Sequence record: KY555145.1
Direction: 5' to 3' (one strand)
DNA: 64,000 nucleotides
Part shown: positions 13,814-57,047 of the stretch, piece by piece
How the letters are laid out: each line of letters opens with the position of its first letter
Position numbering within the stretch: position 1 is the stretch's first letter
Program-made: the position numbers and the translations under genes
Notes under the pieces: generated by a model
Database searches by the model: none
Told to the model about the DNA's origin: nothing
What the model saw: the letters and a program-made list of their open reading frames with translations, nothing else

Positions 13814-13876
13814 AAAAGGGCCTCCGGCGTTGTCGTCGGAGGCCCTTCTAGCGAGTCGGTGTCAGGCTGTCAACAC
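13814..13876 (-). promoter_or_regulatory. repeated-family promoter overlapping a terminator hairpin whose loop is the leader box
   Basis: TTGACA-N17-TAGAAG; GGGCCTCCG-ACGACAACGC-CGGAGGCCC-TTTT. Confidence 0.8.
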
Positions 13877-13889
13877 ATGTCAGCCAGGA

Positions 13890-14501
13890 TCAGGCGGCGT
13901 TCGTCACCAGGGTTTCCAGGCGGTCAAAGCCCAGGTCGAGGCGGCCCCACATCGACGAGGGCGTATGCGGCTTGACCACCTCGGTGAACCGCGCGCGCTC
14001 CTTCAGATACATGCGGGCCATGGGGATGTTCGGCTGGCCGGTCGCCGGGTCCTTGATCGAGGCCTCGACATTGGCGATCCGGTCGGCGAGCTTGAGGATG
14101 CAGGCCTTGGGGTGCTCGCCCAGCTTGCGATAGATGTCCTCGTTGCGGGCCTTGCGGTTGGGGCCAATGCCCGAGACCGCCCAGACCAGCGCCGCGACGT
14201 CCTCGCCGAACTTTTCCTTGATCATCTCCAGCCGCTGCTCGGGCGTCATGTCGAGATGGGTGTCCTCGATCACGTCATGCAGCTTGGCGGCGGCCGTCCA
14301 GGTAAAGCCCAGGAACCCGTAATCGTCGAGGATGCGCTCGACCTTCTGGAGGTGATAGAGATAGGGCTGGCCGGCGTACTTCTGGTCCCCGTGGGCGACG
14401 ATGGCGAATTCCGTCGGGTCTTCCTGGCGCAGCGGCGCGCCCGGCGCCGTCGGGAGGCCGGTCAGGATGGAGGCGAGTTGGTCGAGCGAGGCGTCAGACA
14501 T
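13890..14501 (-). CDS. HD-domain hydrolase, RelA/SpoT small alarmone hydrolase-like
   Basis: AH.DQKY.GQPYLYHL, AAKLHDVIEDT, LKLADRIAN. Confidence 0.8.
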   Translation of the reverse strand: MSDASLDQLASILTGLPTAPGAPLRQEDPTEFAIVAHGDQKYAGQPYLYHLQKVERILDDYGFLGFTWTAAAKLHDVIEDTHLDMTPEQRLEMIKEKFGEDVAALVWAVSGIGPNRKARNEDIYRKLGEHPKACILKLADRIANVEASIKDPATGQPNIPMARMYLKERARFTEVVKPHTPSSMWGRLDLGFDRLETLVTNAA

Positions 14502-14907
14502 GGGGCTTCTCGGAGATCGGAGTGAAGACTTCCAGGCCGTCGACGACCTGCATCAGATGCGTCGGCGGGTGGGCGGGATTGTAGCGGATGTAGCCGGCGA
14601 GGCCGCCGTCGATCATCGCCCCGCCCCGCTCCTTGTAGTCGTGCCGGAAGCGCGAGACCAGGAACGAGCCGTCAGGCATCTCGATCGCCGAGAACTGGGC
14701 CTGTCGGATCGAGGCCGCCGAGGTGATGTAGAGCCCGCCGTTCAGGGGATGGGTGAAGAGCCCGAAGTAGTTGTCGTGGCCCTTCTCGCGGTCCGGCGTC
14801 TCGGTGTAGAAGACGTGGAACGGCCCCTCACGATCGGGCAGGTCGTAATAGCCGACGTACTTGGCGTTGTAGTACTTTTCGGCCCCGGCGATGTTGATGC
14901 TGCTCAT
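14494..14907 (-). CDS. conserved phage hypothetical protein
   Basis: ATGA overlap; aromatic-rich 137 aa. Confidence 0.65.
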   Translation of the reverse strand: MSSINIAGAEKYYNAKYVGYYDLPDREGPFHVFYTETPDREKGHDNYFGLFTHPLNGGLYITSAASIRQAQFSAIEMPDGSFLVSRFRHDYKERGGAMIDGGLAGYIRYNPAHPPTHLMQVVDGLEVFTPISEKPHV

Positions 14908-15407
14908 GCGACCCTCAGGAATTCTCCCCAGGCGGGGAGGGCGTGCTTCAGATAGGCGGCGTGCGCCTCGTCCGGCGTCGTGTAGCACCCAAGATAGCGG
15001 TACACCCCGTTGATCGTGACCTGGGCCTGGAACGGCTTCGTCTTGCTCCGGCTCTTGGTCACGCCCTTGGGAAGCGCGCCGACGTTCGGGCGGTTCACGA
15101 GGTTCTGGGACCGCGTCGCCTTCCGGAGGTTCTTGATCCGATTGTTGCGCCGGTTCAAGTCCTTGTGGTCGACGTCGTGATCGGGCATCACCCCGTGATG
15201 GATCGCCCAGGCCACCTTGTGGGCGGCGATTTGAATTCGCCGGCCGCCATAGGAGACCTTCATCACTCGATAGCCGTCCTTGGTCACCGAGCCGCAGCGC
15301 TTGCGGGACTTGGAGCCCCGCACGGTGATGGCGCCGGTGGCGGGATCGTACTTGTAGCGCGCCCGGAGGAAGTCGACCGGGATCGAAAACTCTGCATCCC
15401 CCGACAT
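14904..15407 (-). CDS. HNH homing endonuclease with AP2-like DNA-binding domain
   Basis: AHKVAWAIHHG..P.HDVDHKDLNRRNNRI.NLR.AT..QN; YLGCY.T.DEAH.AY. Confidence 0.88.
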   Translation of the reverse strand: MSGDAEFSIPVDFLRARYKYDPATGAITVRGSKSRKRCGSVTKDGYRVMKVSYGGRRIQIAAHKVAWAIHHGVMPDHDVDHKDLNRRNNRIKNLRKATRSQNLVNRPNVGALPKGVTKSRSKTKPFQAQVTINGVYRYLGCYTTPDEAHAAYLKHALPAWGEFLRVA

Positions 15408-15411
15408 AGGA

Positions 15412-15651
15412 TTAGTCCTTCTGGGCGTGCCGCTTGAAGAGGAGGTAGAAGCCGTAGGCGACGAGCACCGGAATCCAGAGCAGGATCAGGGCCACAGTCT
15501 GACCGAGGGTCATGAAGAAGAACGCGGTCTTCCAGTCGTTGTTGTACTGGTTGTCGCGCACCGCATGGACTTTCGGATAGTCGATCGCATAGCGGTAGCC
15601 GGCGCGCGCGAGGCCCAGAAGCAGGCCGATGATGAAGTAGAGATCGGTCAT
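15412..15651 (-). CDS. small membrane protein
   Basis: two hydrophobic segments. Confidence 0.6.
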   Translation of the reverse strand: MTDLYFIIGLLLGLARAGYRYAIDYPKVHAVRDNQYNNDWKTAFFFMTLGQTVALILLWIPVLVAYGFYLLFKRHAQKD

Positions 15652-15654
15652 GGC

Positions 15655-15921
15655 TTACTTCTCCGAGGCCTCGATCATCTTCTGGGCGCCGGCGTTCAGC
15701 TTCTTGCGCAGGAGCCAGAAGACCGGAATCCAGAACAGGGCGAACAGGCTGGCGGGCCAGAGGGCGCCGAGGACCAGACCGGTGATGAAGACGAACCAGC
15801 CGTAGATGCCGAATTCGTCGAGGGTCCTGATCCCCATCTCGCGGACGAAGGTCGGGACGATGGCCGCGCCGGCGACCCACCATCCGATGGCCAGGAAAAG
15901 GCCGACGAGCCAGTAGAACAT
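15655..15921 (-). CDS. small membrane protein
   Basis: hydrophobic segments. Confidence 0.6.
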   Translation of the reverse strand: MFYWLVGLFLAIGWWVAGAAIVPTFVREMGIRTLDEFGIYGWFVFITGLVLGALWPASLFALFWIPVFWLLRKKLNAGAQKMIEASEK

Positions 15922-16984: not shown

Positions 16985-16987
16985 GGC

Positions 16988-18220
16988 CTAGCCCTTCACG
17001 CAGAGGACTTGCTTGAGGGTGTGGACGATGTCCACGAGGTCCTTCTGGGCCTCCATGACCGCGTCGATGTCCTTGTAGGCCATCGGGATTTCGTCGATCA
17101 CGCCGGCGTCCTTGCGGCACTCCACGCCCTCGGTGGCCTTGATCTGGTCCTCCAGGGTGAAGGTCGCCTTGGCCTGGGTCCGCGACATCGTCCGGCCCGC
17201 GCCGTGCGAGCACGAGCAGAACGAGTCCGCATTGCCCTTGCCGCGCACGATGTAGGACTTGGCCCCCATCGAGCCGGGGATGATCCCGAACTGGTCCTTC
17301 TGCGCCGACACCGCGCCCTTGCGGGTCACGAAGACCCACTCGTCGAAGTGGAACTCCTTCTGGACGTAGTTGTGGTGGCAGTTCACCGCTTCCTTGTCCG
17401 TCTTGAACGGCGGCAGGCCCGAGGCGCGCATGGCTTCCAGGACCCGGACCATCATCATCTCGCGGTTGATCCGCGCGAAGTCCTGGCCCCAGGCGACGGC
17501 TTCCACGTAGTCGTGGAACTCCGGCTCGCCCTCGCAGAGCCAAGCAAGGTCCTTGTCCAGCGGCTTGCGCCCGTCACGCCGCAGCATCATCTCCTTGGCC
17601 TTCTCGATGAAGATACGGCCGATGGTGTTGCCGACGCCGCGCGAGCCCGAGTGGAGCATCACCCAGACGCGCTGGTCCTCGTCGAGGCAGACCTCGATGA
17701 AGTGGTTGCCGCCGCCCAGGGTGCCCAGTTGGACCACGCTGTTGGCGTTCTTCAGCGCCGGGTACTTCTCGCAGAGCTTGTCGAACCGCGCCTCCAGGCC
17801 CGAATCGACCCACTTGCGCAGGATCGAGTTGGGGATGCCGCTGCGCCCGTTCCAGCCGCCCGACGGACCCGGCCCGCCGTGCGGGACGGCGTGCTCGATC
17901 AGCGAGCGAAGCTTGGACAGGCTGTCGGGGAGGTCCGACGCGGTCAGGCTGGTGCGGACCGCCATCATGCCGCAGCCGATGTCGACGCCGACGGCGGCCG
18001 GGATGATCGCGCCCTTGGTCGGGATCACCGAGCCCACGGTCGAGCCGATGCCCATGTGGACATCCGGCATCAGGGCGACATGCGAGTGAATGAAGGGCAG
18101 GGCCGCAAGGTTGTGGGCCTGGACCTGAGCCGGTTGCTCGAAGTTCACGCCGCGAACCCAGGCCTTGATCACCCCGCCATTCCAGCCGTTGATCTCTTCG
18201 TAATGGGTCTCGGCGGACAC
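16988..18220 (-). CDS. rtcB: RtcB RNA 3'-phosphate/5'-OH ligase
   Basis: MPDVH, GVDIGCGM, GTLGGGNHFIE, MLHSGSRG, CHHNY, RKGA, PGSMG, SHGAGR, DEIPMAYK. Confidence 0.95.
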   Translation of the reverse strand: MSAETHYEEINGWNGGVIKAWVRGVNFEQPAQVQAHNLAALPFIHSHVALMPDVHMGIGSTVGSVIPTKGAIIPAAVGVDIGCGMMAVRTSLTASDLPDSLSKLRSLIEHAVPHGGPGPSGGWNGRSGIPNSILRKWVDSGLEARFDKLCEKYPALKNANSVVQLGTLGGGNHFIEVCLDEDQRVWVMLHSGSRGVGNTIGRIFIEKAKEMMLRRDGRKPLDKDLAWLCEGEPEFHDYVEAVAWGQDFARINREMMMVRVLEAMRASGLPPFKTDKEAVNCHHNYVQKEFHFDEWVFVTRKGAVSAQKDQFGIIPGSMGAKSYIVRGKGNADSFCSCSHGAGRTMSRTQAKATFTLEDQIKATEGVECRKDAGVIDEIPMAYKDIDAVMEAQKDLVDIVHTLKQVLCVKG

Positions 18221-18236
18221 GGCGGGCTCCTTCTGT

Positions 18237-18286
18237 GGTGTCGTGATTTACGACTTTTGACCATGCTCCTCGGACGGTGTCAACAC
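18237..18286 (-). promoter_or_regulatory. repeated-family promoter with variant box (ACGACACC)
   Basis: GTGTTGACA-N17-TCAAAA, then box and GAAGGAG RBS of rtcB. Confidence 0.65.
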
Positions 18287-18463: not shown

Positions 18464-18485
18464 CTTGAAGGGGTACGCTAAAACG

Positions 18486-18520: not shown

Positions 18521-18549
18521 TAGTCCAGGGCGGGGCTAGAGCCGCCGCC

Positions 18550-20454: not shown

Positions 20455-20741
20455 CAGGCCGCGAGCCCGCGCTGCTTCAAGGCGACGATCTGCTCGATCT
20501 CCTTGAGGATGTGGTCCGACAGGCGGTCGGTCCGTTCCTTGATGCCGGCGGGGACGCCGATCTTGCACTGACCGATCTCGTGCAGGCGGTCGGAGACGGC
20601 CTTCAGGTCGATCAGGGTGTCGCTGATCAGCACCTCGGCGAGGCCGATGGCCTCGGTCTGGATGGCGGCGATCCGCTGGGCGGTGGTCTGCGCCGATTGG
20701 CCCGCGACGAGGGCCAGGGCGGCGGTGTTCTTCTGGGTCAT
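20454..20741 (-). CDS. hypothetical coiled-coil protein
   Basis: first gene after promoter. Confidence 0.7.
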   Translation of the reverse strand: MTQKNTAALALVAGQSAQTTAQRIAAIQTEAIGLAEVLISDTLIDLKAVSDRLHEIGQCKIGVPAGIKERTDRLSDHILKEIEQIVALKQRGLAA

Positions 20742-20754
20742 GGAGGTCTCCTTC

Positions 20755-20803
20755 GTTGTCGTCGGGCGTGACTTCTAGTTGGGTTCCTGGAGGCTGTCAA
20801 CAC
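20755..20803 (-). promoter_or_regulatory. repeated-family promoter with GACGACAAC box
   Basis: GTGTTGACA-N17-TAGAAG-N8-GACGACAAC-GAAGGAG. Confidence 0.85.
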
Positions 20804-21370: not shown

Positions 21371-22788
21371 ATCAGCGCTCCTTGGCTCGGATCGGCCGGC
21401 GCGTAGACGGCGCGGTTGATGGTGGTCTCCGGCTCGCCCGAGCGCTTGTTGGCGCCGTGACGCTTGATCGTGGCCCGGATGGCGTAGCGCTTGCCGGCCT
21501 CGGGACGGTACTTGCCGGTGTGGAAGTTCACCACCGCCGAGCCGTCGTCGCAGCGGATGGCCACGATGCAGGTCGTCTCGCCGAAGTCGTTGGTGTAGAG
21601 GTTGGTCCGCACGACCTCGCCCACGAAGTCCACGCGCTGGCCCTCGGCGGCGTCGAGGTGCTTGGCAGGCGGGCGCTGGGGAGCGTCGGCCTTCTTGCGG
21701 GCGTCCTCCTCGCGCTCCAGGGCGCGGCCGACCGACAGACCGACAGCGGCTACGATCACCCCGATGCGCTTGACCAGGACGAAATCTTCCTGGGCGAGCA
21801 CCATCTTGATGTTCTCGTGGAACGGATTGCCCGGCTTCAGCGAGCGGATGTAGTCGGTGAAGCCCTCGCGGTCGAATTCCGGCTCGAAGCCCTTGTAGGA
21901 GTCGATGATCTCCTGGTTACGCTTGCGCTCGTAGTCCGACAGGCCATAGCCCCGGTTGCCGAACATCAGCAGGCCGACATGCTTGCGCGAGTCTTCCTTG
22001 CTGTAGCCGCCGAGCCGGCGCGCCACGCGGTACGAGGTCCGCAGGAGTTCGCCCAGATCGACGTACTCCTCGCCCTTGCGCCAGCCGCCCGGATCACCCT
22101 TGAAGTTGTTCAGGTCATCCCAGAACGACAGCATGCGGACCGGATCGGCCCCCATATAGGCTTTCAGGCACGAGGCCCCGATCATCTTGATCCCGTCGGC
22201 GGTCTCGCAGACGAAGGTGTGTTTGCGGCGCTGGTTGACGCCGCAGTGGGCGCACTCGCCAGCGTGTACACGCATCCCTTCCACGACGTCGTTGGCGGTC
22301 TTGTCGACCAGCTTGAGGTAGTGCCCCGTCTTCTCGGCGGCTTCGTAGATGCCCAGGACGCGGCCCTTCTCGCCGACCATCGGCGGAACCGACAGGGTGA
22401 TCTCGATGCGGCGCACCACCATGGCCTCGTCGCTCAGATAGGGCGAGGGAATGTCGACCACCTTGCGCTCCAGGACCTCCAGGGTCTGGGCGCCGTGGGC
22501 GGCCCGCTTCTGGAGCTTGGCCAGCAGGCGCATGAAGCGTTCCTCGACGGCGAAGCCCATCATGAAGGTCAGGACGGCTTGGCCGTCGCGCACGCCTTCC
22601 TGGGCCTCCCACATGGCGGTCCGGTGAGCCTCGCGCTCCTGCTCGTCCTCGAAGATCGACACGCCCCTGGCGGTCACGACCTCGACGCCGTCGACCAGCA
22701 CGCTGGCCTGATCGGCGACCGTCTCGGGACGCTCACCGTAGGTTTCCAGCATGTAGTCCTGGTAGCTGCCTTCGAATTCGCCAAACAT
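21367..22788 (-). CDS. hypothetical protein with Cys cluster and C-terminal OB-like domain
   Basis: CAHCGVNQRR...IGASCL; beta-rich C-terminus; first gene after promoter. Confidence 0.75.
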   Translation of the reverse strand: MFGEFEGSYQDYMLETYGERPETVADQASVLVDGVEVVTARGVSIFEDEQEREAHRTAMWEAQEGVRDGQAVLTFMMGFAVEERFMRLLAKLQKRAAHGAQTLEVLERKVVDIPSPYLSDEAMVVRRIEITLSVPPMVGEKGRVLGIYEAAEKTGHYLKLVDKTANDVVEGMRVHAGECAHCGVNQRRKHTFVCETADGIKMIGASCLKAYMGADPVRMLSFWDDLNNFKGDPGGWRKGEEYVDLGELLRTSYRVARRLGGYSKEDSRKHVGLLMFGNRGYGLSDYERKRNQEIIDSYKGFEPEFDREGFTDYIRSLKPGNPFHENIKMVLAQEDFVLVKRIGVIVAAVGLSVGRALEREEDARKKADAPQRPPAKHLDAAEGQRVDFVGEVVRTNLYTNDFGETTCIVAIRCDDGSAVVNFHTGKYRPEAGKRYAIRATIKRHGANKRSGEPETTINRAVYAPADPSQGALI

Positions 22789-22802
22789 GATCGGCTCCTC
22801 TC

Positions 22803-22849
22803 GCTGTCGTGAGGGAGCTTGTACGGACTCACGCCGATGCTGTCAACAC
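22803..22849 (-). promoter_or_regulatory. repeated-family promoter with variant box (ACGACAGC)
   Basis: GTGTTGACA-N17-TACAAG. Confidence 0.8.
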
Positions 22850-25728: not shown

Positions 25729-26087
25729 TGACCCGACACCTTCGCCAGTTGCTTTTCCAGTTCGGCGCGCAGTTCGGCGTCGCTCAGGCCCAGGCGTTCC
25801 TTCATGAACGCCACCGCCTCGGCGGCGGTCTCGAACGAGCGGGTCTCGGCATCGGTGCTGTCGCGCAGGCCGAGGATTTCGACCACGCCCCAGATCGTCG
25901 CCCAGGCGACGGCGATCAAGGCCGCCACCGTGATGACAAAGCCGAAGTTGAATTGGCGCGCGCCGGCGAGTTCCACCGCCTCGGCCGCCGTCCAGGCTAC
26001 CGCGACCATGCTCACCGAGGCGAGATGGAGCAGGGCGCCCCTGCGGGTGTGGGTCGGGCGGACGGTCAGGGTCATCTTGTCTTGCAC
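25725..26087 (-). CDS. membrane protein (2 TM)
   Basis: GTG start after GAGGAG; first gene after promoter. Confidence 0.65.
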   Translation of the reverse strand: MQDKMTLTVRPTHTRRGALLHLASVSMVAVAWTAAEAVELAGARQFNFGFVITVAALIAVAWATIWGVVEILGLRDSTDAETRSFETAAEAVAFMKERLGLSDAELRAELEKQLAKVSGQ

Positions 26088-26103
26088 GAGGGTCTCCTCT
26101 GCG

Positions 26104-26150
26104 GTTGTCGTCGCCCGCCTCTTAGGCCAAGGCCAAAGCCTTGTCAACAC
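26104..26150 (-). promoter_or_regulatory. repeated-family promoter with GACGACAAC box
   Basis: GTGTTGACA-N17-TAAGAG-N6-GACGACAAC. Confidence 0.85.
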
Positions 26151-29037: not shown

Positions 29038-29207
29038 CGCAGTAGTTCTCCATCGGCGATCCGGATGTCGGTCAGGGGATAGTCCTGGAAGAAGGCGCGC
29101 AGCCGCTGGCGCAGCATCCCCTCGACAGCCTCTGCGTTGTTCAGGGCCTCGGCGAGGTCTTCGAACATCTGGCGCTCATGGGCGCGTAATGGGCGGGTCT
29201 TCGGCAT
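29034..29207 (-). CDS. hypothetical protein (57 aa)
   Basis: AGGAGG RBS; first gene after promoter; below ORF-track cutoff. Confidence 0.65.
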   Translation of the reverse strand: MPKTRPLRAHERQMFEDLAEALNNAEAVEGMLRQRLRAFFQDYPLTDIRIADGELLR

Positions 29208-29218
29208 GGGACCTCCTG

Positions 29219-29265
29219 GTTGTCGTCGTGCGGCTTTTAGCCCCGATAGGTCAGGCTGTCAACAC
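29219..29265 (-). promoter_or_regulatory. repeated-family promoter with GACGACAAC box
   Basis: GTGTTGACA-N17-TAAAAG-N6-GACGACAAC. Confidence 0.85.
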
Positions 29266-30083: not shown

Positions 30084-31101
30084 CGGCGACCTCCTCGGCC
30101 TCTTCCTCGCTCGGGGCGATCGTCGAGCCCGAGTATTCCTGAAGGTGATCGACCGCCTTCTGGGCCAGCGACGCGGCGGTGAAGATGAAGCGCTTGTCGC
30201 CCTTCAGGACCTTCAGCCAGGAGGCGACATAGGAGGCGTGATCCTCACGGACTTCCGGGGTCAACCCAAGAATGGCGCAGAGGAAGGCCGAGCCCAGTTC
30301 GGCGACCAGTTCCTCGGCGGCGTAGGCCTCGTCCCCGAAGCGCTTGCCGAACTCGCGGTTCAGGCGGTCCTCGCGACCGGTCCAGTGGACGAACTCGTGG
30401 CCGAGGGTGGCGTAGTAGCTCTCCTCGTCGCGGAAGGCGTCGAACTGGGGCATCTGGATGAAGTCCAGGTGCGGCGAGAAGAAGGCCCGATGGCCGCCGT
30501 GGCGCACCTCGGCGCCCGTGGCGGCGAAGAACTTCTCGACCGCCGCGTTGCGCTCCAGGACCCGCTTGGCTTCCTCGGCGGGCGTCGCCGGGGCCGGGGC
30601 GGGCTTCTGGTAGAAGCGCTCGGGCAGGCCGTCGATCTGCTCGACGTTGAACACCAGATAGGACTTCAGGAACGGGATCATCCGCTCGACGTCCTTGCCG
30701 TTGGCGTCCTTCTCGGTCTTCTTGAACTTCGAGGCGTAGACGATCAGTTCGGACTTCTCGCCCTTGCGGACCTGACCACCCAGGTCCCTGGCTTGGTTGT
30801 AGGTCATCCAGGTCGGGTTGGTGTAGCCGCGCTCCTGGGCGGCGGCCCACAGGAGGACCACGTTGATCCCGGTGTAGCGCTGGCCGGTCACCCGGCGGGG
30901 ATAGATCGCCATGCCGGCCGAGGCGCCGCCGGGAGCCGACCACGGCTTCAACCAGGGACGCACGCCAGCGTCGAGGGCGGTGATGATCTTGTCGGTGATC
31001 TTCTGATAGAGGTCGACCTTGACGGTTTCGGTCGAGGCCTTGCCGGTCTCCTTGGTGGAGCGCTTGGCCGGCTTCTTCTTGGCGGCGGTGGTCTTGGTCA
31101 T
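30070..31101 (-). CDS. ardC: ArdC-like antirestriction ssDNA-binding protein (DUF1738 plus zincin domain)
   Basis: YQKITDKII.AL..GV.PW.KPW, YTGINV, WMTY.QA..LGGQVRKGEK, VFNVEQ, HEFVHWTG...RL.R, EELVAELGSAFL. Confidence 0.92.
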   Translation of the reverse strand: MTKTTAAKKKPAKRSTKETGKASTETVKVDLYQKITDKIITALDAGVRPWLKPWSAPGGASAGMAIYPRRVTGQRYTGINVVLLWAAAQERGYTNPTWMTYNQARDLGGQVRKGEKSELIVYASKFKKTEKDANGKDVERMIPFLKSYLVFNVEQIDGLPERFYQKPAPAPATPAEEAKRVLERNAAVEKFFAATGAEVRHGGHRAFFSPHLDFIQMPQFDAFRDEESYYATLGHEFVHWTGREDRLNREFGKRFGDEAYAAEELVAELGSAFLCAILGLTPEVREDHASYVASWLKVLKGDKRFIFTAASLAQKAVDHLQEYSGSTIAPSEEEAEEVADAAA

Positions 31102-31113
31102 CAGGGCCTCCTC

Positions 31114-31159
31114 GTTGTCGTCGAGGGGTTCTAGCCGGCGACCGCGACCTTGTCAACAC
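31114..31159 (-). promoter_or_regulatory. repeated-family promoter with GACGACAAC box
   Basis: GTGTTGACA-N17-TAGAAC-N5-GACGACAAC-GAGGAGG. Confidence 0.88.
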
Positions 31160-32296: not shown

Positions 32297-32550
32297 GACT
32301 TGAGGCTCTGGCAGGCGAACGTGATCACGTCGCCGAGGGTGTTGAAATCCTCGGGGAACTGGACCGGCTCAGGGACGGCGAAGTCCTCCTCCAGGCACAT
32401 CATCAACTCGATGATGTCCAGGCTGTCGAGGCCCAGATCATCTTCCAGCCGTAGCCCCTCGTCCATATCGTCGAGGGTGTACGACCGGTCGGTGATCGCA
32501 TGGGCGTAGTCGAAGGTCGCCGCCTTGATCTCGTCGCGCGTGAAGGTCAC
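32293..32550 (-). CDS. acyl carrier protein-like
   Basis: LEDDLGLDSLDIIELMMCLEEDF (DSL phosphopantetheine site), acidic 85 aa. Confidence 0.85.
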   Translation of the reverse strand: MTFTRDEIKAATFDYAHAITDRSYTLDDMDEGLRLEDDLGLDSLDIIELMMCLEEDFAVPEPVQFPEDFNTLGDVITFACQSLKS

Positions 32551-33281
32551 GGCTCTCCCCCTGGTGTCGTTTCGGCGCTTCTAGCCCTCCCAAGCAGAGC
32601 CGTCAACACATCAGCGCCACGCCAGACCCAGGATAGGCTCAGAACGAGGTCGCGGTCCTCATAGGCGGCGCTGCGCCCGGTGATCACCTTGATCGCCGAG
32701 AGCGGGCCGAACCGCCAGAAGACGACCGTGCGCGAGTCGTTGCGGCCGGGCAGGTGCTCCAGCAGCACGCGACGCTTGATCGCCAAATGTCGCTGCTCCC
32801 TGTGAAGGACGAGCGCGACCTTGCGCGTCGGGTCAGACCCGAACCACCGGCGCCAGTAGCCCGGATTGTCGATGTTCTCGAACAGCCGGCCGATCCGCTT
32901 GCTGACGGGGCGAAGCCCAGGCTCGCGCCGGCGCACGCTCAGCGGTGGGAAGGTGCAAGGCGGCCACTCCGGAAGCAGGCGCAGGCGCAGCCTCCGGAAT
33001 TCCCACGCCGGCATGGCGTTGTCCTTGGTGTTGTTGCACGCCACGCAGGCCGCCGCCAGATTGCTCTCGTGGTTCGATCCGCCCTCGGCCCTAGCCTCCA
33101 GGTGCTCGATCGTCACCTCGTCGGGCTCCAGCTTGCCACCGCCCCGGCCGATCCGCCGGCGATAGGCCATCTGCCCCGTGCAATAGGTGCAGAGGCCACC
33201 CGCCTCCAGGAAGAGGCGGTGGCGGCGGTTCGGAGCGGCGGGCGGTAGCGGGTCCTGGACCAGCACCTCAGATGAGGACAT
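32547..33281 (-). CDS. HNH endonuclease (McrA/HNH_5 type)
   Basis: CTYCT...TIEHL.AR.EGGSN...NLAAACVACNNTK. Confidence 0.85.
   Translation of the reverse strand: MSSSEVLVQDPLPPAAPNRRHRLFLEAGGLCTYCTGQMAYRRRIGRGGGKLEPDEVTIEHLEARAEGGSNHESNLAAACVACNNTKDNAMPAWEFRRLRLRLLPEWPPCTFPPLSVRRREPGLRPVSKRIGRLFENIDNPGYWRRWFGSDPTRKVALVLHREQRHLAIKRRVLLEHLPGRNDSRTVVFWRFGPLSAIKVITGRSAAYEDRDLVLSLSWVWRGADVLTALLGRARSAETTPGGEP
32563..32609 (-). promoter_or_regulatory. repeated-family promoter with variant box, inside the 3' end of the HNH gene
   Basis: GTGTTGACG-N17-TAGAAG-N7-ACGACACC-AGGGGGAG. Confidence 0.75.
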
Positions 33282-35765: not shown

Positions 35766-35777
35766 AGGGTTCCTTCC

Positions 35778-35826
35778 GTTGTCGTCACCCGCGACACTAG
35801 ATGGTCGGAGGTGTGACTGTCAACAC
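35778..35826 (-). promoter_or_regulatory. repeated-family promoter with GACGACAAC box
   Basis: GTGTTGACA-N18-TAGTGT-N7-GACGACAAC-GGAAGGA. Confidence 0.8.
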
Positions 35827-37277: not shown

Positions 37278-37289
37278 GGAGGCCTCCTT

Positions 37290-37338
37290 GTTGTCGTCGA
37301 GGATGGCTTCTAGCCGGCCCAGGTCAGGTTGTCAACAC
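37290..37338 (-). promoter_or_regulatory. repeated-family promoter with GACGACAAC box
   Basis: GTGTTGACA-N17-TAGAAG-N8-GACGACAAC-AAGGAGG. Confidence 0.88.
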
Positions 37339-41319: not shown

Positions 41320-41600
41320 CAGGCGGCGCCCTGGGCGATTTCGTAGGTGATCTTCGAGACGCCGATATCGACCACGAACCGGTCGGGCGAGCCGTCGAAC
41401 ACGTAGTTGGCCTGACACCCGATAGGCATCATCTTGCCGTTGTCCATCCAGATCGCGTCCGGCGTGGCCTCGACCACGCCGCGCACCTGCGCCTGGGCCG
41501 GAGAAGGTTGCATTTCCACGCCGCCCACGGTGATCGCCACGGCCGCGAGACGCGCGCCCGGCTGGTTCAACTTGGCGATCAGGTCCTGGATCGAGTTCAC
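41319..41600 (-). CDS. hypothetical protein
   Basis: GTG after AAGGAGG; first gene after promoter. Confidence 0.65.
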   Translation of the reverse strand: MNSIQDLIAKLNQPGARLAAVAITVGGVEMQPSPAQAQVRGVVEATPDAIWMDNGKMMPIGCQANYVFDGSPDRFVVDIGVSKITYEIAQGAA

Positions 41601-41612
41601 GCGGCCTCCTTC

Positions 41613-41663
41613 TGTCGTTGTGTCGACATAAGCTCTAGCCGTGGTTTTCCGGCCTGTCAACAC
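41613..41663 (-). promoter_or_regulatory. repeated-family promoter with variant box
   Basis: GTGTTGACA-N17-TAGAGC...CGACACAACGACAG-AAGGAGG. Confidence 0.8.
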
Positions 41664-45274: not shown

Positions 45275-45380
45275 TGGCGGCACCCTAGAGGAGCGTTCGA
45301 GTGTTGACAAGCACCAATGTCGCTGGCTTTCGAGTGTTGACAAGTCCGGTGCTCGTCTATAGGGAGATCGGGACGACAAC
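45275..45380. promoter_or_regulatory. divergent control region with two GAGTGTTGACAAG direct repeats and a leader box
   Basis: repeat cores at 45301 and 45334; leftward TTGTCA-N17-TAGGGT; rightward TTGACA-N17-TAGGGA; GACGACAAC at 45372. Confidence 0.75.
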
Positions 45381-45394
45381 GAAAGGAGCCCGCC

Positions 45395-45703
45395 ATGCGC
45401 TATGTGCTCGACTATGCCGACGACCGGGACAAGCCGGTCTACACCGACTTCCAGGCCGGCGACCGCAAGGCGGCCATCGCCAAGGCCAAGCGCCTGCTCG
45501 CCAAGGCGATCAAGACCGTCGATTTCTCGCTCCATGGGGCCTACATCTTCGTCGATCCGACGGGCGTCGCCCGCGACGTCGACGACATGATCCCGTTCGG
45601 CATGCTGAGCACGATGGCCTACGCCAGCATCATCACCCCGTCGATGATCTCGTTCGACGACCGCGACGCCAAGGCGGCGATCGCCGCGAGGCTCGCCCAA
45701 TGA
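45395..45703 (+). CDS. hypothetical protein (gene A of duplicated block)
   Basis: AAGGAG RBS. Confidence 0.7.
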   Translation: MRYVLDYADDRDKPVYTDFQAGDRKAAIAKAKRLLAKAIKTVDFSLHGAYIFVDPTGVARDVDDMIPFGMLSTMAYASIITPSMISFDDRDAKAAIAARLAQ

Positions 45704-48513: not shown

Positions 48514-48768
48514 ATGCTGACCAAGGACGAGATCACCTTCGCGGGCCTGATCAAGGCCATGGAGGACGCCCGACGCACCGCCAAGGCGGCGGGCGATCTC
48601 GTCAGCACGGCCGAGATCGACCGCTGGTTCAAGGAACACGCGCCGATCATCCGGGAGGTCCGCGACAAGGCCGAGGCCGACGAATTCGACGCTGGCGCGA
48701 GAGTGTTGACAACCTCTGAGGAAGGGACTAAAGACACCCTCGACGACAGCGAAAGGAGCCTGCCTTGA
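48514..48768 (+). CDS. hypothetical protein
   Basis: operon ORF. Confidence 0.6.
   Translation: MLTKDEITFAGLIKAMEDARRTAKAAGDLVSTAEIDRWFKEHAPIIREVRDKAEADEFDAGARVLTTSEEGTKDTLDDSERSLP
48703..48750 (+). promoter_or_regulatory. repeated-family promoter with variant box (GACGACAGC)
   Basis: GTGTTGACA-N17-TAAAGA...GACGACAGC-GAAAGGAG. Confidence 0.8.
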
Positions 48769-51322: not shown

Positions 51323-51323
51323 C

Positions 51324-51840: not shown

Positions 51841-51889
51841 GTGTTGACAAGGCCCTCGGACCTCCTCTATACCCACGCTCGACGACAAC
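51841..51889 (+). promoter_or_regulatory. repeated-family promoter with GACGACAAC box
   Basis: GTGTTGACA-N18-TATACC...GACGACAAC-GAGAGGAG. Confidence 0.85.
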
Positions 51890-51902
51890 GAGAGGAGTTC
51901 CC

Positions 51903-53663
51903 ATGGCCGAGACCATGTCCCTGAGTTTCCGGATCGAAGGCGCCGCCCTGGTGGAGCGGGCGCGCGATCGCGTCATCGAAGGTAACTGGGAGCACGGCCT
52001 GCGCATCCTGGTCGAGGGCCTGCACGGCATGTCCTACGAACTCGCGATCGACATCCTGCTTGGCAAGCACACCCTGGGCGGCTGGTCCTCGGACCCCGAG
52101 GGCGTCTATCTCACCGACCAGGACCCGGAGGACGAGACTTTCAAGCGCTACAAGGAAACCCTCGACTACCAGTTCGCCGGCGTCTTCAAGCTGGACGACG
52201 GCCGGATCATGCGCCCCTACGCGGTGGTCGACAGCTTCTCCAAGATCGACTTCGACTCTAGGGTCCGCTTCCTGCGGCTGGCCCAGGGCTCGGACCCGGT
52301 GTTCTCGCGCCCCAAGCGCTATCACGACCCCCGCGCCGAGATCAACGGCGAGGAGATCGACTGGGCCTATCGCGCCCTGCACTACGCCGACGAGCCGACC
52401 CAGGACATCGTCCGTCTGGTCCGCATGGAGGGCTTCCACCCCACGATCCGCGCGGCGGTCCTGTTCAAGGAAGTCCGCGACTACCCCAAGCTCCTGCTCC
52501 CGAAGGTCGAGACCGACGCCCAGAAGGCCGTCGACGTGGCGATCAAGGCCCAACGCGGCCTCTCCAAGCGTGGGCACGTCTACGAGTACGGCGCCGGTCA
52601 GGACTTCGACAAGGAGCACTACAAGACCACCATGGGGATCGATCAGGTCCCCACCGCGTGGTCCGTGCGCAATCCGAAGTACGTCGATCCCGACGCCAAG
52701 TTCGTGAAGGACACCCTGGCCGAGATCGACGGCGACAAGCGCCCGGCGCCGGCCGGTGATTACGCCGGCGCCATGAACCGGATGATCAAGGATGAGATGG
52801 ACGGCGGCATGGACATCAGCGCGGCCGTCGCCATGACCCAGGCCAAGATGGCGCTGCTGGGCGGCATGGCCGAGGACCCCGAGCAGCGCCTGCGGGCGAT
52901 CAACGACGCCTACGCCGCCAAGTACGAGAAGGCCGAGGGCCGCAGCGTCGAGGAGTACCGCAAGGCCATCATCGCCCAGGCCGGCGATGACTTCTTCGAT
53001 CTCGCGTACACGGATGTGGACGGCAAGGAGGTCGTCCTGAAGGTCCCGACCGCGCCGTTCGAGCAATGGGCTCTGTGGCGCACCGCCGGCGCCCATCTGG
53101 CCAAGCCCTGGAAGCGGGTGACCTACACCGGCTTCAAGACCTTCGGCGATGATCCCTACCACACCGACTGGGTGCTGGGCGCGGGGCTCAACCCCGAGGA
53201 CTGGCCGATCATCGAGGCCGACAATCCGCCGCTCCACAAGGCCGCCTGGGACAAGCGCTTCCGGGTCGCCGAGGAGAAGCTGGGCGGCAACATGCGCGTC
53301 CTGCTCGGCAAGGGCTACGTGACCGGCAAGATCGTGATGCTCAAGCCGGGCGAGGCCCTGTCGCCGGGCGAGATCGGCGTGATCCGCAACGCCGGCCCTG
53401 ACTACGTCCAGGCCGCCCAGAGCGCCATCGAGCACAACTCCGCCTTGATCTGCGAGAACGGCGGCAGCGTCGCCCACCTCGTGGTCGAGTACCTGGACAA
53501 GCCCCTGCGTCTGGCGCGGATCGAGAACGCCCGCAAGATTTTCAAGGACGGCATGACCGTCTACCTCGACTTCGACAAGTCCACGCGCGAGATCGGCAAG
53601 GGAAGCCTTGGCCCGAGCCCGGCGGACCTTGGACTCGATACACAATGGGAGATTTTCGAATGA
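51903..53663 (+). CDS. 586-aa protein with C-terminal PEP-utiliser phosphohistidine swivelling domain
   Basis: ALICENGGSVAHLVV...IENA.KIFKDGMTVYLD resembles the GGxTSHxAI...xxdGxxvxvD consensus. Confidence 0.65.
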   Translation: MAETMSLSFRIEGAALVERARDRVIEGNWEHGLRILVEGLHGMSYELAIDILLGKHTLGGWSSDPEGVYLTDQDPEDETFKRYKETLDYQFAGVFKLDDGRIMRPYAVVDSFSKIDFDSRVRFLRLAQGSDPVFSRPKRYHDPRAEINGEEIDWAYRALHYADEPTQDIVRLVRMEGFHPTIRAAVLFKEVRDYPKLLLPKVETDAQKAVDVAIKAQRGLSKRGHVYEYGAGQDFDKEHYKTTMGIDQVPTAWSVRNPKYVDPDAKFVKDTLAEIDGDKRPAPAGDYAGAMNRMIKDEMDGGMDISAAVAMTQAKMALLGGMAEDPEQRLRAINDAYAAKYEKAEGRSVEEYRKAIIAQAGDDFFDLAYTDVDGKEVVLKVPTAPFEQWALWRTAGAHLAKPWKRVTYTGFKTFGDDPYHTDWVLGAGLNPEDWPIIEADNPPLHKAAWDKRFRVAEEKLGGNMRVLLGKGYVTGKIVMLKPGEALSPGEIGVIRNAGPDYVQAAQSAIEHNSALICENGGSVAHLVVEYLDKPLRLARIENARKIFKDGMTVYLDFDKSTREIGKGSLGPSPADLGLDTQWEIFE

Positions 53664-55483: not shown

Positions 55484-55531
55484 GCGTTGACAACACTCTC
55501 GCGCCAACATAGAACCGCCCTCGACGACAAC
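55484..55531 (+). promoter_or_regulatory. repeated-family promoter with GACGACAAC box
   Basis: GCGTTGACA-N17-TAGAAC-N7-GACGACAAC-GAGGAGG. Confidence 0.85.
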
Positions 55532-55543
55532 GAGGAGGCTTCG

Positions 55544-55927
55544 ATGAAGCTCGCGACCCAAGACCGCACCGACCCGCGCCTGAACGCGCGCTACCGCCTC
55601 GCCAAGGCGGTGTTCTACTACGGCGGCCCGCACGAGTACCCGATCCACCTGAACGACTGGTGGAACGAGGTGACGCCGGCCGACGTCGAGGACCGCATCT
55701 CCGAACTCTGCCGCGAACTGTCCAAGCTGTCGGGCCGGACCCTGGCGCCGGCGACCTTCTACGAGCGGATGAAGCTGGGCTTCGTCGACCTCCCGGAAGT
55801 GAAGGACGAGGACTTCGCCGCCCTGTCGGAGACGACCCGCAACAACCTGCTCGCCATGCAGGATCGCTTCTCGGTCCACGGCAGCGGCTTCATGCTCTAC
55901 TGGAACATCGTGAAAGAGGAGGCCTGA
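55544..55927 (+). CDS. hypothetical protein
   Basis: first gene after promoter. Confidence 0.7.
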   Translation: MKLATQDRTDPRLNARYRLAKAVFYYGGPHEYPIHLNDWWNEVTPADVEDRISELCRELSKLSGRTLAPATFYERMKLGFVDLPEVKDEDFAALSETTRNNLLAMQDRFSVHGSGFMLYWNIVKEEA

Positions 55928-55930
55928 GCC

Positions 55931-56290
55931 TTGGACCACAACGACCCCGCCAAGCCCTTGTGCAAGATCGCCGTCCTGGCCGGCCCTCTGTGGGAGGTGG
56001 ACACCGACAACTGCGAGACCCTGCTGGTCCCGGTCAAGGATGTTCCCCACCCCTGCGCCGAGAACTTCCAGGACGAGATCGACATGGCCTTGAACATGAG
56101 CGGCGAGGCCATGGACTGGCGCCGCGTCGAGGGCTTCGCCGCCGTCCTGCGCGACCCGCGCGGCTCGGACATGTCGCCCGTCGAGGGGCCGTTCGCCAGC
56201 GCCGAGGAGGCCTTCAACTACGTCAAGGACCAGTGGAGCGACCGCATCCCTGGCTCGATGGGGCTGGCGCCCTACGAGGCCCCGCAGTGA
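55931..56290 (+). CDS. hypothetical protein
   Basis: TTG start after GAGGAGG. Confidence 0.6.
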   Translation: MDHNDPAKPLCKIAVLAGPLWEVDTDNCETLLVPVKDVPHPCAENFQDEIDMALNMSGEAMDWRRVEGFAAVLRDPRGSDMSPVEGPFASAEEAFNYVKDQWSDRIPGSMGLAPYEAPQ

Positions 56291-56556
56291 TCAAGATCAC
56301 GCGCCGCATGACCTGGGCTGACGCCGGCCGCTGCTCGAAGACCGACTGGACCGCGTGGCTCATCCCAGCCGGCCCGCTGATCGCGGCGCTGCCGTTCGCC
56401 GCCCTGACCGGCGCGTGCCTGTCGATCAAGGACCCGACCCACACCAATCTGGCCATCGCCTTGCTGCCCGGCGCGGCGATGCTCTTCAACGGCTGGATGG
56501 CGACGTTCGCCTTCGACCAGTTCCTGCGTGGGCGGGCCGGCGAGGAGGTCCGCTGA
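56287..56556 (+). CDS. small membrane protein
   Basis: GTGA overlap; 2 TM. Confidence 0.55.
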   Translation: MIKITRRMTWADAGRCSKTDWTAWLIPAGPLIAALPFAALTGACLSIKDPTHTNLAIALLPGAAMLFNGWMATFAFDQFLRGRAGEEVR

Positions 56557-56557
56557 C

Positions 56558-56986
56558 ATGAAGCTCTTCATCATCATCCTGGCGGCGATCCTGTGGCTGG
56601 GCGACACCGCCCGCGCCCAGTCCCTGCCGTTCCGCCTGACCCAGCCGCTGAACTACGGCAGTGATCTCCACTACACCGAGACGCGCGACGCGTCCGCCTC
56701 GCGCGAGCCGCTCAAGCGGGTGATCGTCGACCTGTCGCGCTCGCCCACGGTGGTCATCGAGCGGGCCTGGACCTATGCCGAACTCGCCGGTGCCCAGACG
56801 ACCTGCGGCGAGATCGTCCTCAACGGCCGTCGTCAGAGGTTCGTCCTCCAGGAAGGCCCCAAGACCGCCGTGATCGGCCCGGCGGTGCCCGCCTACTTCT
56901 GGTCGCTCGACGTGCCGGACTACCAGTTCCGCAACGCCGGGTGCCTGCGCGACCGCGCCGCCCTGATCATCCCTCCGAGGTTCTGA
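56558..56986 (+). CDS. secreted/periplasmic hypothetical protein
   Basis: MKLFIIILAAILWLGDTARA signal peptide. Confidence 0.65.
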   Translation: MKLFIIILAAILWLGDTARAQSLPFRLTQPLNYGSDLHYTETRDASASREPLKRVIVDLSRSPTVVIERAWTYAELAGAQTTCGEIVLNGRRQRFVLQEGPKTAVIGPAVPAYFWSLDVPDYQFRNAGCLRDRAALIIPPRF

Positions 56987-56999
56987 TCCTGGCGTTCTT

Positions 57000-57047
57000 G
57001 TGTTGACAAGGCCGGCGCCGCTGGCCTAGAACGTCGTGGACGACAAC
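57000..57047 (+). promoter_or_regulatory. repeated-family promoter with GACGACAAC box
   Basis: GTGTTGACA-N18-TAGAAC-N6-GACGACAAC-AGGAGG. Confidence 0.85.

What the first reader, a model, noticed from the sequence alone, without database searches (positions are those of the whole stretch)
13829..57047. Conserved GACGACAAC 'leader box' at the 5' end of nearly every phage early transcript
Sequence shows about 18 copies of GTGTTGACA-N17/18-TA(G/A)AA(G/C)-like promoters, all oriented with local transcription. Eleven carry an exact GACGACAAC a few nt downstream of the -10 element and just before the Shine-Dalgarno (minus strand at 13829, 20755, 26104, 29219, 31114, 35778, 37290; plus strand at 45372, 51881, 55523, 57039). 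Five carry variants (18237, 22803, 32563, 41613, 48742). Spacer sequences are not conserved, so the box is under its own selection. Established knowledge: TTGACA-N17-TAnnnn fits housekeeping sigma70/RpoD promoters, which have no such downstream consensus. Inference: the box lies at about the start site, so most early mRNAs would begin with (G)ACGACAAC. It could be a self tag read by a phage RNA-binding or translation factor, spare phage mRNA from a shutoff nuclease, act as a nut-like antitermination site, or be an operator for one of the phage XRE/GcrA/wHTH regulators. I do not recognise a described function.
Basis: partly seen in the sequence, partly recalled or inferred. Interest (0 to 1): 0.8.

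Follow-up and report, generated by a model that had tools for sequence, protein, structure and literature searches.

The report
Early-mRNA leader tag matching a phage sRNA
Nearly every early operon of this Caulobacter phage starts with the same 9-base tag, and the phage also encodes a small RNA whose exposed loop is the exact complement of that tag, so the phage may switch its whole early programme through one RNA.

Summary
The window is Caulobacter phage Ccr29 (phiCbK group), bases 124001-188000.

**Observation: confirmed.**
- There are 11 exact GACGACAAC copies, against 0.6 expected by chance. All lie at the stated coordinates and in the sense orientation.
- Five variants sit at the same place in otherwise identical promoters.
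- The layout is TGGC-N6-GTGTTGACA-N17/18-TAGAAG-N5-8-box-N0-5-SD-start.
- Between Ccr29 and CcrRogue the box is as conserved as the -35 hexamer (0.98 against 0.99). The flanks are about 0.7.

**New finding.**
- The only antisense copy of the box in the 229-kb genome lies outside the window, at the end of the tRNA cluster.
- It forms the unpaired loop of a conserved ~96-nt transcript. This transcript has its own promoter, a 5' hairpin and a terminator.
- Box and loop change together across genera:
  - phiCbK/Rogue: GACGACAAC and GUUGUCGUC.
  - Colossus/CcrPW: UGACGAUCA and UGAUCGUCA, with CCUCC (an anti-SD) next to the loop.
  - Kabachok/Bajun: GACGAC and GUCGUCA.
- Bertelyvirus phages have neither the box nor, at the syntenic site, the RNA.
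- Predicted duplexes of about -27 kcal/mol cover the box and the SD.

**Best reading.** The box is the docking site of a phage sRNA that most likely shuts off early mRNAs. No expression data could be checked. I found no paper that describes either element.

The parts
13810..13873 (-). Early promoter, exact box (13829-13837), SD and ATG of Ccr29 gp170
   Evidence: predicted duplex with the sRNA seed -32.5 kcal/mol
18218..18286 (-). Early promoter (-10 TCAAAA), variant box CACGACACC (18237-18245), SD and GTG of RtcB (gp180)
20739..20800 (-). Early promoter, exact box (20755-20763), SD and ATG of gp185
   Evidence: the Rogue orthologue keeps the box while the spacer diverges
22786..22846 (-). Early promoter, variant box CACGACAGC (22803-22811), SD and ATG of gp188
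26085..26147 (-). Early promoter, exact box (26104-26112), SD and GTG of gp195
29205..29262 (-). Early promoter, exact box (29219-29227), SD and ATG at 29207. This ATG lies 39 nt upstream of the annotated gp201 start.
31099..31156 (-). Early promoter, exact box (31114-31122), SD and ATG of the ArdC-like antirestriction gene gp205
32548..32606 (-). Early promoter (-35 TTGACG), variant box AACGACACC (32563-32571), SD and GTG of gp210
   Evidence: weakest predicted duplex in the window (-15.7 kcal/mol)
35763..35823 (-). Early promoter, exact box (35778-35786), SD and ATG of gp218
37275..37335 (-). Early promoter, exact box (37290-37298), SD and ATG of gp221
   Evidence: in the Rogue orthologue the discriminator is completely different and the box is identical
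41598..41660 (-). Early promoter, variant box GACACAACGACAG (about 41611-41623), SD and GTG of gp231. It heads the operon gp231-gp230-gp229. gp229 (39963-40340) is the Cro/CI-family tgrL orthologue.
   Evidence: The tgrL cloning primer ATGGCTGACGACAAGACC matches the gp229 start. tgrL is early by RNA-seq.
45337..45397 (+). Early promoter, exact box (45372-45380), SD and ATG of gp237. This is the first promoter of the rightward arm. A second GTGTTGACA lies 33 nt upstream (45301-45309).
48706..48767 (+). Early promoter, variant box GACGACAGC (48742-48750), SD and TTG of gp250
   Evidence: the A-to-G change keeps a G-U pair with the sRNA (duplex -29.4 kcal/mol); the Rogue orthologue has the canonical box
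51844..51905 (+). Early promoter, exact box (51881-51889), SD and ATG of gp256
55487..55546 (+). Early promoter, exact box (55523-55531), SD and ATG of gp262. Its spacer is an inverted copy of the upstream TGGCGCGAGAGTG element.
57003..57060 (+). Early promoter, exact box (57039-57047), SD and ATG of gp266
5630..5678 (-). Promoter of the same type without a leader: an ATG lies 7 nt after the -10 (leaderless-type). No SD, so it would escape the sRNA.
   Evidence: same arrangement in Rogue
11825..11873 (-). Promoter of the same type with an ATG 8 nt after the -10 TAGTGT (leaderless-type)

Best explanation
The box is the 5'-terminal tag of the early mRNAs of this phage. It is the docking site for a phage-encoded trans-acting small RNA.

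**The sRNA gene.** It lies outside the window, at the end of the tRNA cluster: Ccr29 record 57364-57459, which is phiCbK JX100813 about 52957-53052. It has its own strong host-type promoter (AAATTTTTC-TGGC-N6-GTGTTGACA-N17-TAAAAC). It folds into a 5' hairpin, a 10-nt unpaired loop GUUGUCGUCA, and a terminator hairpin with a U tail.

**The pairing.** The loop pairs with GACGACAAC. The adjacent CUUCUG (CCUCC in other genera) pairs with the Shine-Dalgarno sequence that follows the box by 0-5 nt. The result is a duplex of about 20 bp over the ribosome-binding site of the first gene of about 24 early operons.

**Most likely consequence.** Translation is blocked and the early mRNAs are destabilised. 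As the stable sRNA accumulates, this would produce the decline of early transcripts seen after 15 min of infection. Early promoters that make leaderless mRNAs would escape.

**Shown:** the motif, its position, its selection, the complementary conserved structured locus, the co-variation and the co-absence.

**Inferred:** that the sRNA is made, that it pairs in vivo, and the sign of the effect. I put pairing as real and functional at about 0.75, and repression rather than protection or activation at about 0.7 given pairing.
For: 1. **Enrichment and position.** 11 exact copies against 0.6 expected. All are sense and all lie between the -10 and the SD. Genome-wide, 17 of 20 exact copies are promoter-linked.

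2. **Purifying selection.** In 14 orthologous promoter pairs between Ccr29 and Rogue, identity is box 0.98, -35 0.99, SD 0.95, -10 0.85, spacer 0.72, discriminator 0.71, box-SD linker 0.48 and CDS 0.77.

3. **The antisense copy.** The single antisense exact copy lies in a non-coding stretch, between a conserved promoter and a hairpin with a T-run. That hairpin is annotated as a terminator in phiCbK.

4. **Conservation of the locus.** It is conserved in 26 phages. CGTTGTCGTCAG is invariant, while the 5' hairpin changes by compensatory substitutions: GGACC/GGTCC, GGGCC/GGCCC, GGGGCC/GGCCCC.

5. **Folding.** The anti-box is the unpaired stretch between two stable hairpins. Z-scores are -4.4 to -6.7 in four genera.

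6. **Co-variation.**
 - Colossus has the box tGACGATCA (24 copies against 2.4 in shuffles). Its syntenic RNA reads CCUCC-UGAUCGUCA.
 - Kabachok and Bajun have the box GACGAC and the loop GUCGUCA next to CCUCC or CUCCUU.

7. **Cross-matrix of duplex energies.** The cognate seed is best for its own leaders in 5 of 6 lineages. Shuffled seeds never reach the cognate value (0 of 200 each).

8. **Specificity.** First genes behind box promoters score -21.8 to -32.9 kcal/mol. The 63 internal genes of the same arm have a median of -15.8.

9. **Co-absence.** The Bertelyvirus phage RB23 shows no box at its early promoters. RB23 and CcrSC show no such RNA at the syntenic site.

11. **Timing.** Early genes, including tgrL behind one of these promoters, peak at 15 min and then decline (PMC10688885).
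Against: - No expression data for the sRNA could be examined. The phage sheets of the published RNA-seq table are not held, and that study counted annotated genes only.
- One antisense 9-mer in 229 kb is about what chance gives, so the case rests on context, conservation and co-variation.
- Kikimora fits poorly. Its loop AUCGUCG matches only one of about four leaders seen.
- In Ccr29 the anti-SD part (CUUCUG) is predicted to be held in the 5' stem.
- In the phiCbK group the sRNA promoter looks like an early promoter itself, so sRNA and targets would be made together. A delay must then come from accumulation.
- A simple E. coli-consensus scan finds no promoter or terminator at the Ccr29 locus. 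Caulobacter -10 elements end in C and fail its rule. The T-run has 4 T in the scan's best 8-base window, one short of its threshold.
- A double-stranded DNA motif read by a protein would also co-vary in both orientations.
Confidence: 0.6

Rival explanations
1. The box is a DNA operator. A phage-encoded DNA-binding protein sits on +1 to +9 of every early promoter and shuts off, or otherwise modulates, early transcription. The inverted copy in the tRNA region would simply be one more site.
For: - The position overlaps the start site. That is the classic place for a repressor.
- The core ACGACA also occurs next to the -35 of other promoter classes in the phiCbK group: TGTCGTGAATC-TTGACA, and ACGACA-nnn-TTGACA in the tRNA region.
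- The phage encodes several HTH proteins, a GcrA homologue and a T5 A1-like protein.
- A change of protein specificity would make all sites co-vary in either orientation.
Against: - The box has no dyad or direct-repeat symmetry.
- This model does not explain three features of the inverted copy: it is flanked by the complement of the SD in four lineages, it lies in the unpaired loop of a conserved hairpin-loop-terminator transcript, and it has its own conserved promoter.
- The GTCGTG part of the second promoter class is not conserved in Colossus or Kabachok, where only (G)AATCTTGAC is kept. The shared hexamer therefore looks coincidental.
Confidence: 0.15
2. The box is an initial-transcribed-sequence or start-site element read by host RNA polymerase, tuning promoter escape or start-site choice. 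This would resemble the conserved downstream region of T5 early promoters.
For: The distance to the -10 is fixed at 5-8 nt. These are strong consensus promoters. The motif begins with the purines G-A at the expected start.
Against: - phiCbK-type phages, Colossus-type phages and RB23 all infect C. vibrioides CB15. Yet they carry GACGACAAC, tGACGATCA and no box respectively. One host polymerase cannot be the reason.
- This model does not predict a complementary, co-varying RNA.
Confidence: 0.08
3. The box is a translational enhancer or standby site read by the host ribosome (protein S1 or 16S rRNA), or simply a U-poor, unstructured leader.
For: - It sits directly 5' of the SD and is rich in A and C.
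- RB23 leaders without the box are also rich in C and A.
- Its complement GTTGTCGTC resembles 16S rRNA around position 1055. Firmicute-specific primer hits appear. From my own knowledge, proteobacterial 16S has GCTGTCGTC, which gives 7 contiguous pairs.
Against: - Selection for lack of structure does not give an invariant 9-mer.
- The same host carries different boxes.
- A 7-nt match somewhere in a 1.5-kb rRNA is expected by chance about once in four, and that rRNA segment is base-paired in helix 34 (own knowledge).
Confidence: 0.07
4. There is no separate function. The box is part of a promoter-leader cassette that spread through the genome by duplication and recombination.
For: Several promoters share identical spacers or flanks (record 179487, 193375 and 196130; 137873 and 193375; 146846 and 188358). 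One spacer holds an inverted copy of the upstream element.
Against: Orthologous promoters in Rogue keep the box at 0.98 identity, while the spacer, discriminator and linker have drifted to 0.48-0.72. Most spacers within Ccr29 are unrelated.
Confidence: 0.05

Closest known systems
Phage RNA repressors: c4 antisense RNA of P1/P7 and CI RNA of P4 (own knowledge)
   Same: These are small phage-encoded RNAs that act in trans. They pair a short exposed sequence with complementary sites repeated in the phage's own transcripts. In the c4 case the paired site covers a ribosome-binding site.
   Different: Those are immunity factors of temperate elements. They are processed from a longer transcript and act on one operon with 2 sites. 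Here the gene stands alone with its own promoter and terminator, in a phage described as virulent. The target is a tag at the 5' end of about 24 separate operons.
T4 RegB endoribonuclease and RegA translational repressor (own knowledge)
   Same: Both give global post-transcriptional inactivation of phage early mRNAs through the Shine-Dalgarno region.
   Different: Those are proteins. RegB cuts GGAG, and RegA binds ribosome-binding sites. No RNA guide and no dedicated leader tag is involved.
Bacterial and prophage trans-acting seed sRNAs, such as Hfq-class sRNAs, DicF, and the lambda-encoded sRNA of bioRxiv 10.1101/2024.10.31.621285
   Same: The architecture is the same: 5' stem-loop, single-stranded seed and a Rho-independent terminator with a U tail. 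So is the pairing at or near the ribosome-binding site of many targets.
   Different: Known phage sRNAs mostly target host genes or a single phage gene. Here the predicted regulon is the phage's own early gene set, and the target site is an invariant 9-mer at a fixed position. No Rfam family matches.
Conserved downstream region of phage T5 early promoters (own knowledge)
   Same: Both are conserved sequences just after +1 in strong early phage promoters used by the host polymerase.
   Different: The T5 region is thought to act on the polymerase. Here the sequence differs between phages of one host and has a complementary RNA partner.

Membership tests
Housekeeping sigma-70 (Caulobacter RpoD/sigma-73) promoter | -35 TTGACA-like hexamer, 16-18 nt spacer, and a -10 of the type (GC)TANAWC (consensus from my own knowledge) | tested here: met
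   TTGACA is invariant in 21 of 22 promoters. The spacer is 17-18 nt. The -10 is TA(G/A)AA(G/C), often preceded by C.
Housekeeping sigma-70 promoter | Use by host RNA polymerase early in infection | tested here: inconclusive
   The only link is indirect. The tgrL orthologue lies behind the promoter at 41660, and published RNA-seq shows tgrL to be early. No start-site data exist.
Trans-acting base-pairing small RNA | Independent transcription unit: own promoter and intrinsic terminator, with no ORF | tested here: met
   A conserved promoter and a hairpin with a U-run are present in five lineages. The terminator is annotated in phiCbK and Colossus. A simple E. coli-type scan misses the Ccr29 elements.
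Trans-acting base-pairing small RNA | Conserved secondary structure with a single-stranded seed | tested here: met
   The minimum-free-energy and centroid folds leave exactly GUUGUCGUCA unpaired in Ccr29. The same plan appears in Rogue, Colossus, Kabachok and Kikimora. The 5' hairpin shows compensatory changes.
Trans-acting base-pairing small RNA | Seed complementary to target mRNAs, with co-variation of seed and target | tested here: met
   Kikimora is a weak case.
Trans-acting base-pairing small RNA | The RNA is expressed and changes target translation or stability | not testable with these tools
Lambda-type nut antitermination site | A boxB hairpin (plus boxA) in the nascent RNA | tested here: not met
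   The SD follows the box by 0-5 nt and the start codon by about 15-20 nt. There is no hairpin in the leader.
XRE/Cro-type operator | Dyad-symmetric site of about 14-20 bp | tested here: not met
   GACGACAAC is not self-complementary, and its flanks are not conserved.

The most novel reading that the evidence does not exclude
A large phage described as virulent runs the exit from its early programme through one small RNA. About 24 early operons carry a common 5'-terminal address tag next to the SD, and a single sRNA encoded among the tRNA genes reads that tag. Tag and sRNA have co-evolved across at least four lineages of Dolichocephalovirinae and were lost together in another. This would be an RNA-guided counterpart of T4 RegA/RegB, and the first phage 'self-regulon' sRNA.
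Probability: 0.5. Interest if true: 0.85.

Novelty: new variant of a known kind. Interest (0 to 1): 0.8.

Why it matters
- phiCbK is the standard phage of the Caulobacter cell-cycle field, yet how its early genes (41% of all genes) are switched off is unknown.
- A leader tag read by a phage sRNA would give a simple, testable mechanism for temporal control that needs no new protein. It would add a new use of base-pairing sRNAs in lytic phages.
- It would also provide a compact orthogonal regulator for Caulobacter engineering: a 9-nt tag plus a ~96-nt RNA, with natural variants of different specificity.
- It flags an unannotated RNA gene in more than 30 deposited genomes.

Tried and rejected
- **Published expression data.** The phage sheets of S3 Table of PMC10688885 are cut off in the held copy. 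Per-gene timing could not be tied to promoters.
- **One protein reading ACGACA at +2 (repression) and at -45 (activation).** The idea came from the shared hexamer with the second promoter class, TGTCGTGAATC-TTGACA. I rejected it as the main model because the GTCGTG part is not conserved in Colossus or Kabachok.
- **Pairing with 16S rRNA.** Only 7 contiguous pairs with a helix-34 segment are possible. I judged this to be chance (own knowledge).
- **IMG/VR scan** with CCTCC-N0-8-TCGTCAAGCAG. It returned 118+ mostly chance hits. Only one locus (L078) is a true homologue, and its contig lacks the early region.
- **Simple promoter/terminator scanner.** It uses the E. coli -10 rule and is not informative for Caulobacter-type promoters.
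- **Host-genome test.** Whether the box is common at host RpoD promoters was not run. No tool fetches a whole Caulobacter genome. A collection-wide pattern scan would return tens of thousands of chance hits.
- **NAD-capping or nanoRNA-priming ideas.** These were prompted by the phage NadV/NadM and NrnA genes. I considered them and dropped them for lack of any supporting feature.

Full report
**Source of the window**

The window is identical to Caulobacter phage Ccr29 (KY555145.1), bases 124001-188000. It is 97-100% identical to phiCbK and its close relatives. It covers the two divergent arms of small, mostly unannotated genes that flank a GcrA homologue. I fetched the whole 229-kb genome in five pieces so that the motif could be studied genome-wide.

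Chance expectation is 0.6.
- TTGACA-N17-TA occurs 11 times against 0.18 expected.
- Printing every GTGTTGACA-like site with its downstream sequence shows 16 units in the window with one layout: GTGTTGACA, 17-18 nt, TA(G/A)AA(G/C), 5-8 G+C-rich nt (12 in the variant unit at 41660), the box or a variant, 0-5 nt, a Shine-Dalgarno sequence, 4-9 nt, and a start codon.
- The invariant core is ACGACA(A/G/C)C.
- All units point with the genes. In 15 of 16 the start codon found this way is the annotated CDS start.
- Genome-wide there are 20 exact copies. Seventeen are promoter-linked and continue rightward to about 200 kb. Two are inside genes as Ser-Asp-Asp-Asn codons. One is antisense.

**Where transcription starts**

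No start-site data exist. However, three promoters of the same type carry an ATG 7-8 nt after the -10 hexamer with no SD (window 5670-, window 11865-, record 207028+). This is the arrangement of leaderless mRNAs, which Caulobacter translates well (own knowledge). By that yardstick the start site of the box promoters falls on, or 1-2 nt before, the first bases of the box.

One unit (window 41660) heads the operon gp231-gp230-gp229. The gene gp229 begins ATGGCTGACGACAAGACC. That is the published cloning primer for phiCbK gp216 (tgrL), a gene shown by RNA-seq to peak at 15 min and then decline. 'Early' is therefore supported for at least this promoter.

**The box is under selection**

CcrRogue belongs to another genus and is about 82% identical in conserved genes. 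It has 20 exact copies in the same 100 kb. For 14 orthologous promoter pairs the identity per element is as follows:

| Element | Identity |
|---|---|
| -35 | 0.99 |
| box | 0.98 |
| SD | 0.95 |
| -10 | 0.85 |
| first 90 coding nt | 0.77 |
| spacer | 0.72 |
| discriminator | 0.71 |
| box-SD linker | 0.48 |

Duplication has contributed, since some promoters share spacers. It cannot explain this pattern.

CcrColossus infects the same host. Its early promoters carry tGACGATCA at the same position: 24 copies against 2.4 in shuffles, at least 12 of them behind TTGAC-N-TTTCTTTACA promoters. RB23 (Bertelyvirus, same host) has GCAAGAAAnnTG-TTGACA promoters and no box at all. One host polymerase or ribosome cannot account for three different states.

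**The complementary RNA**

The single antisense copy (record 57407-57415) lies between the last tRNA and gp090. The order of elements is:

1. A promoter, AAATTTTTC-TGGC-N6-GTGTTGACA-N17-TAAAAC.
2. About 40 nt that form a hairpin.
3. CUUCUG-C-GUUGUCGUC-AGGAAC.
4. A 16-bp hairpin followed by UCGUUUCGUUUU.

phiCbK annotates that hairpin as a terminator. The locus is present in 26 phages.

In an alignment of Ccr29, phiCbK, BL57, CcrBL10 and Rogue, the promoter and CGTTGTCGTCAG are invariant. The 5' hairpin changes by paired substitutions. Folding leaves exactly GUUGUCGUCA unpaired between the two hairpins, with z-scores of -4.8 for Ccr29 and -6.7 for Rogue. Rfam has no family for it.

**Co-variation**

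I located the syntenic spot in other genera by synteny (end of the tRNA cluster, upstream of PhoH), not by searching for the complement.

| Lineage | Loop of the RNA (just 5' of its terminator) | Box at early promoters |
|---|---|---|
| Ccr29 / phiCbK / Rogue | CUUCUG-C-GUUGUCGUC | GACGACAAC |
| Colossus (CcrPW 98% identical) | GGGCCUCC-UGAUCGUCA-AGCAG | tGACGATCA; the loop is the exact complement of the box plus an anti-SD |
| Kabachok (Brevundimonas host) | UCCUCC-GUCGUCA | (t)GACGAC, then 3-6 nt, then GGAGGA |
| Bajun | CUCCUU-UCAUCC-GUCGUCA | (G/A)ACGAC, then 4-7 nt, then AAGGAG |
| Kikimora | UCCUCCUU-AUCU-AUCGUCG | mixed; only one of about four leaders (cGACGATA) fits |
| RB23 / CcrSC (Bertelyvirus) | none at the syntenic site | none in RB23; CcrSC early region not fetched |

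Further support:

- In a cross-matrix of duplex energies, the cognate seed is the best partner of its own leaders in 5 of 6 lineages. Shuffled seeds never reach the cognate value (0 of 200 each).
- Within Ccr29, first genes behind box promoters score -21.8 to -32.9 kcal/mol. The 63 internal genes of the same arm have a median of -15.8.
- The predicted duplex runs from the box through the SD.

**Mechanism proposed**

Early mRNAs begin with the box. The sRNA loop nucleates on it and the duplex extends over the SD, which blocks initiation and probably exposes the mRNA to decay. In the phiCbK group the sRNA promoter resembles the early promoters plus an A/T-rich upstream element. That element is otherwise seen only at the tRNA-region promoters. 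The RNA would therefore be made from the start of infection and act once it has accumulated. This would give a pulse of early expression, consistent with the published decline after 15 min. Leaderless early genes would be exempt.

The sign of the effect is inferred. A protective or activating role is not excluded.

**Rivals**

- **DNA operator.** This is the strongest rival, because a double-stranded motif also co-varies in both orientations. It does not explain the adjacent anti-SD, the unpaired-loop placement, or the conserved promoter, hairpin and terminator around the inverted copy.
- **Polymerase-read or ribosome-read elements.** These are disfavoured by the different boxes in phages of one host.
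- **Pure cassette spread.** This is disfavoured by the per-element conservation.

**Literature**

None of the following describes these promoters, the box or the RNA:

- the phiCbK genome paper (PMC3556154);
- the XRE/tgrL paper (PMC10688885);
- the CtrA-site paper (PMC9437464);
- searches for phiCbK with 'small RNA', for Dolichocephalovirinae, and for phage-encoded sRNAs.

This is absence within the held library only.

**Verdict**

The most likely reader of the tag is a previously unannotated phage sRNA. The mechanism rests on sequence, structure and co-variation and awaits expression and genetic tests.

Noticed in passing
Ccr29 record 22154, 25097, 28177, 33162, 35909, 52448, 61172, 76214, 82774, 84912, 98413(-), 105665(-), 111644(-), 120099, 210791 (loci L005, L006, L003, L007): A second promoter class serves the structural and replication modules: (T)GTCGTGAATC directly abutting TTGAC(A/T), often with GTTAACCAT (a CtrA-like half site) 15-25 nt downstream. 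It contains a GANTC CcrM methylation site and forms a 17-bp palindrome, TGTCnnGAnTCnnGACA, over the -35. It is a candidate for promoters that depend on the phage GcrA homologue. The core (G)AATCTTGAC is kept in Colossus, Kabachok, Bajun and Kikimora.
   Followed up: partly
window, 9 nt upstream of each TTGACA (e.g. 13883-13886 minus, 45324-45327 plus): A conserved TGGC lies at about -48 to -45 of the early promoters, followed by (A/G)(A/T)GTG before TTGACA. Its function is unknown. It could be an UP-like contact or a factor site.
   Followed up: partly
window 5630-5678 (-), 11825-11873 (-); Ccr29 record 207028 (+): Some early-type promoters have an ATG 7-8 nt after the -10 and no SD, which suggests leaderless mRNAs. 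In Rogue, the orthologue of the third one has a normal box-SD leader instead.
   Followed up: partly
window 55487-55515; Ccr29 record 193375, 196130 (L004): Three promoters share an identical spacer, ACACTCTCGCGCCAACA. It is the inverted copy of the upstream element TGTTGGCGCGAGAGTGT of other promoters. Other promoters share flanks. Promoter cassettes appear to recombine with one another.
   Followed up: partly
Ccr29 record 196166-196230 (L004 46166-46230); Rogue 192609-192670: One box is followed not by an SD but by a conserved hairpin (GTCCGAAATTTGTAnACnGATTTCGGAC), and only then by the SD. This may be an extra regulatory structure in that leader.
   Followed up: no
window 29168-29207 (-): The annotated gp201 starts at 29168. 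The ATG at 29207 has the box-SD leader directly in front of it and is the more likely start.
   Followed up: no
window 45301-45342 (+): There is a tandem duplicate of GAGTGTTGACAAG, 33 nt apart, at the first promoter of the rightward arm. Rogue has the same arrangement at 166219/166253.
   Followed up: no
Ccr29 record 53075, 53869, 55765, 57328 (L006): The tRNA-cluster promoters carry an A/T-rich AAATTTTTC element upstream of the -35, like UP elements of stable-RNA promoters. Three of the four also have ACGACA, or its complement GTCGTG, just upstream of the -35.
   Followed up: no
CcrRogue 215194-215345 (L009 47194-47345), terminal repeat: Six direct repeats of (G)CGTTTTGACG(T/C) lie within 150 bp, followed by clustered TTAAC sites. 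This looks like an iteron-like array in the terminal repeat.
   Followed up: no
Bajun ON529858.1 1299-1940 (L140): A gene annotated as a T4 MotA-like middle transcription regulator sits at the position syntenic with window 358-957 (Ccr29 gp151). That gene lies behind a box-less GTGTTGACA promoter at window 301.
   Followed up: no
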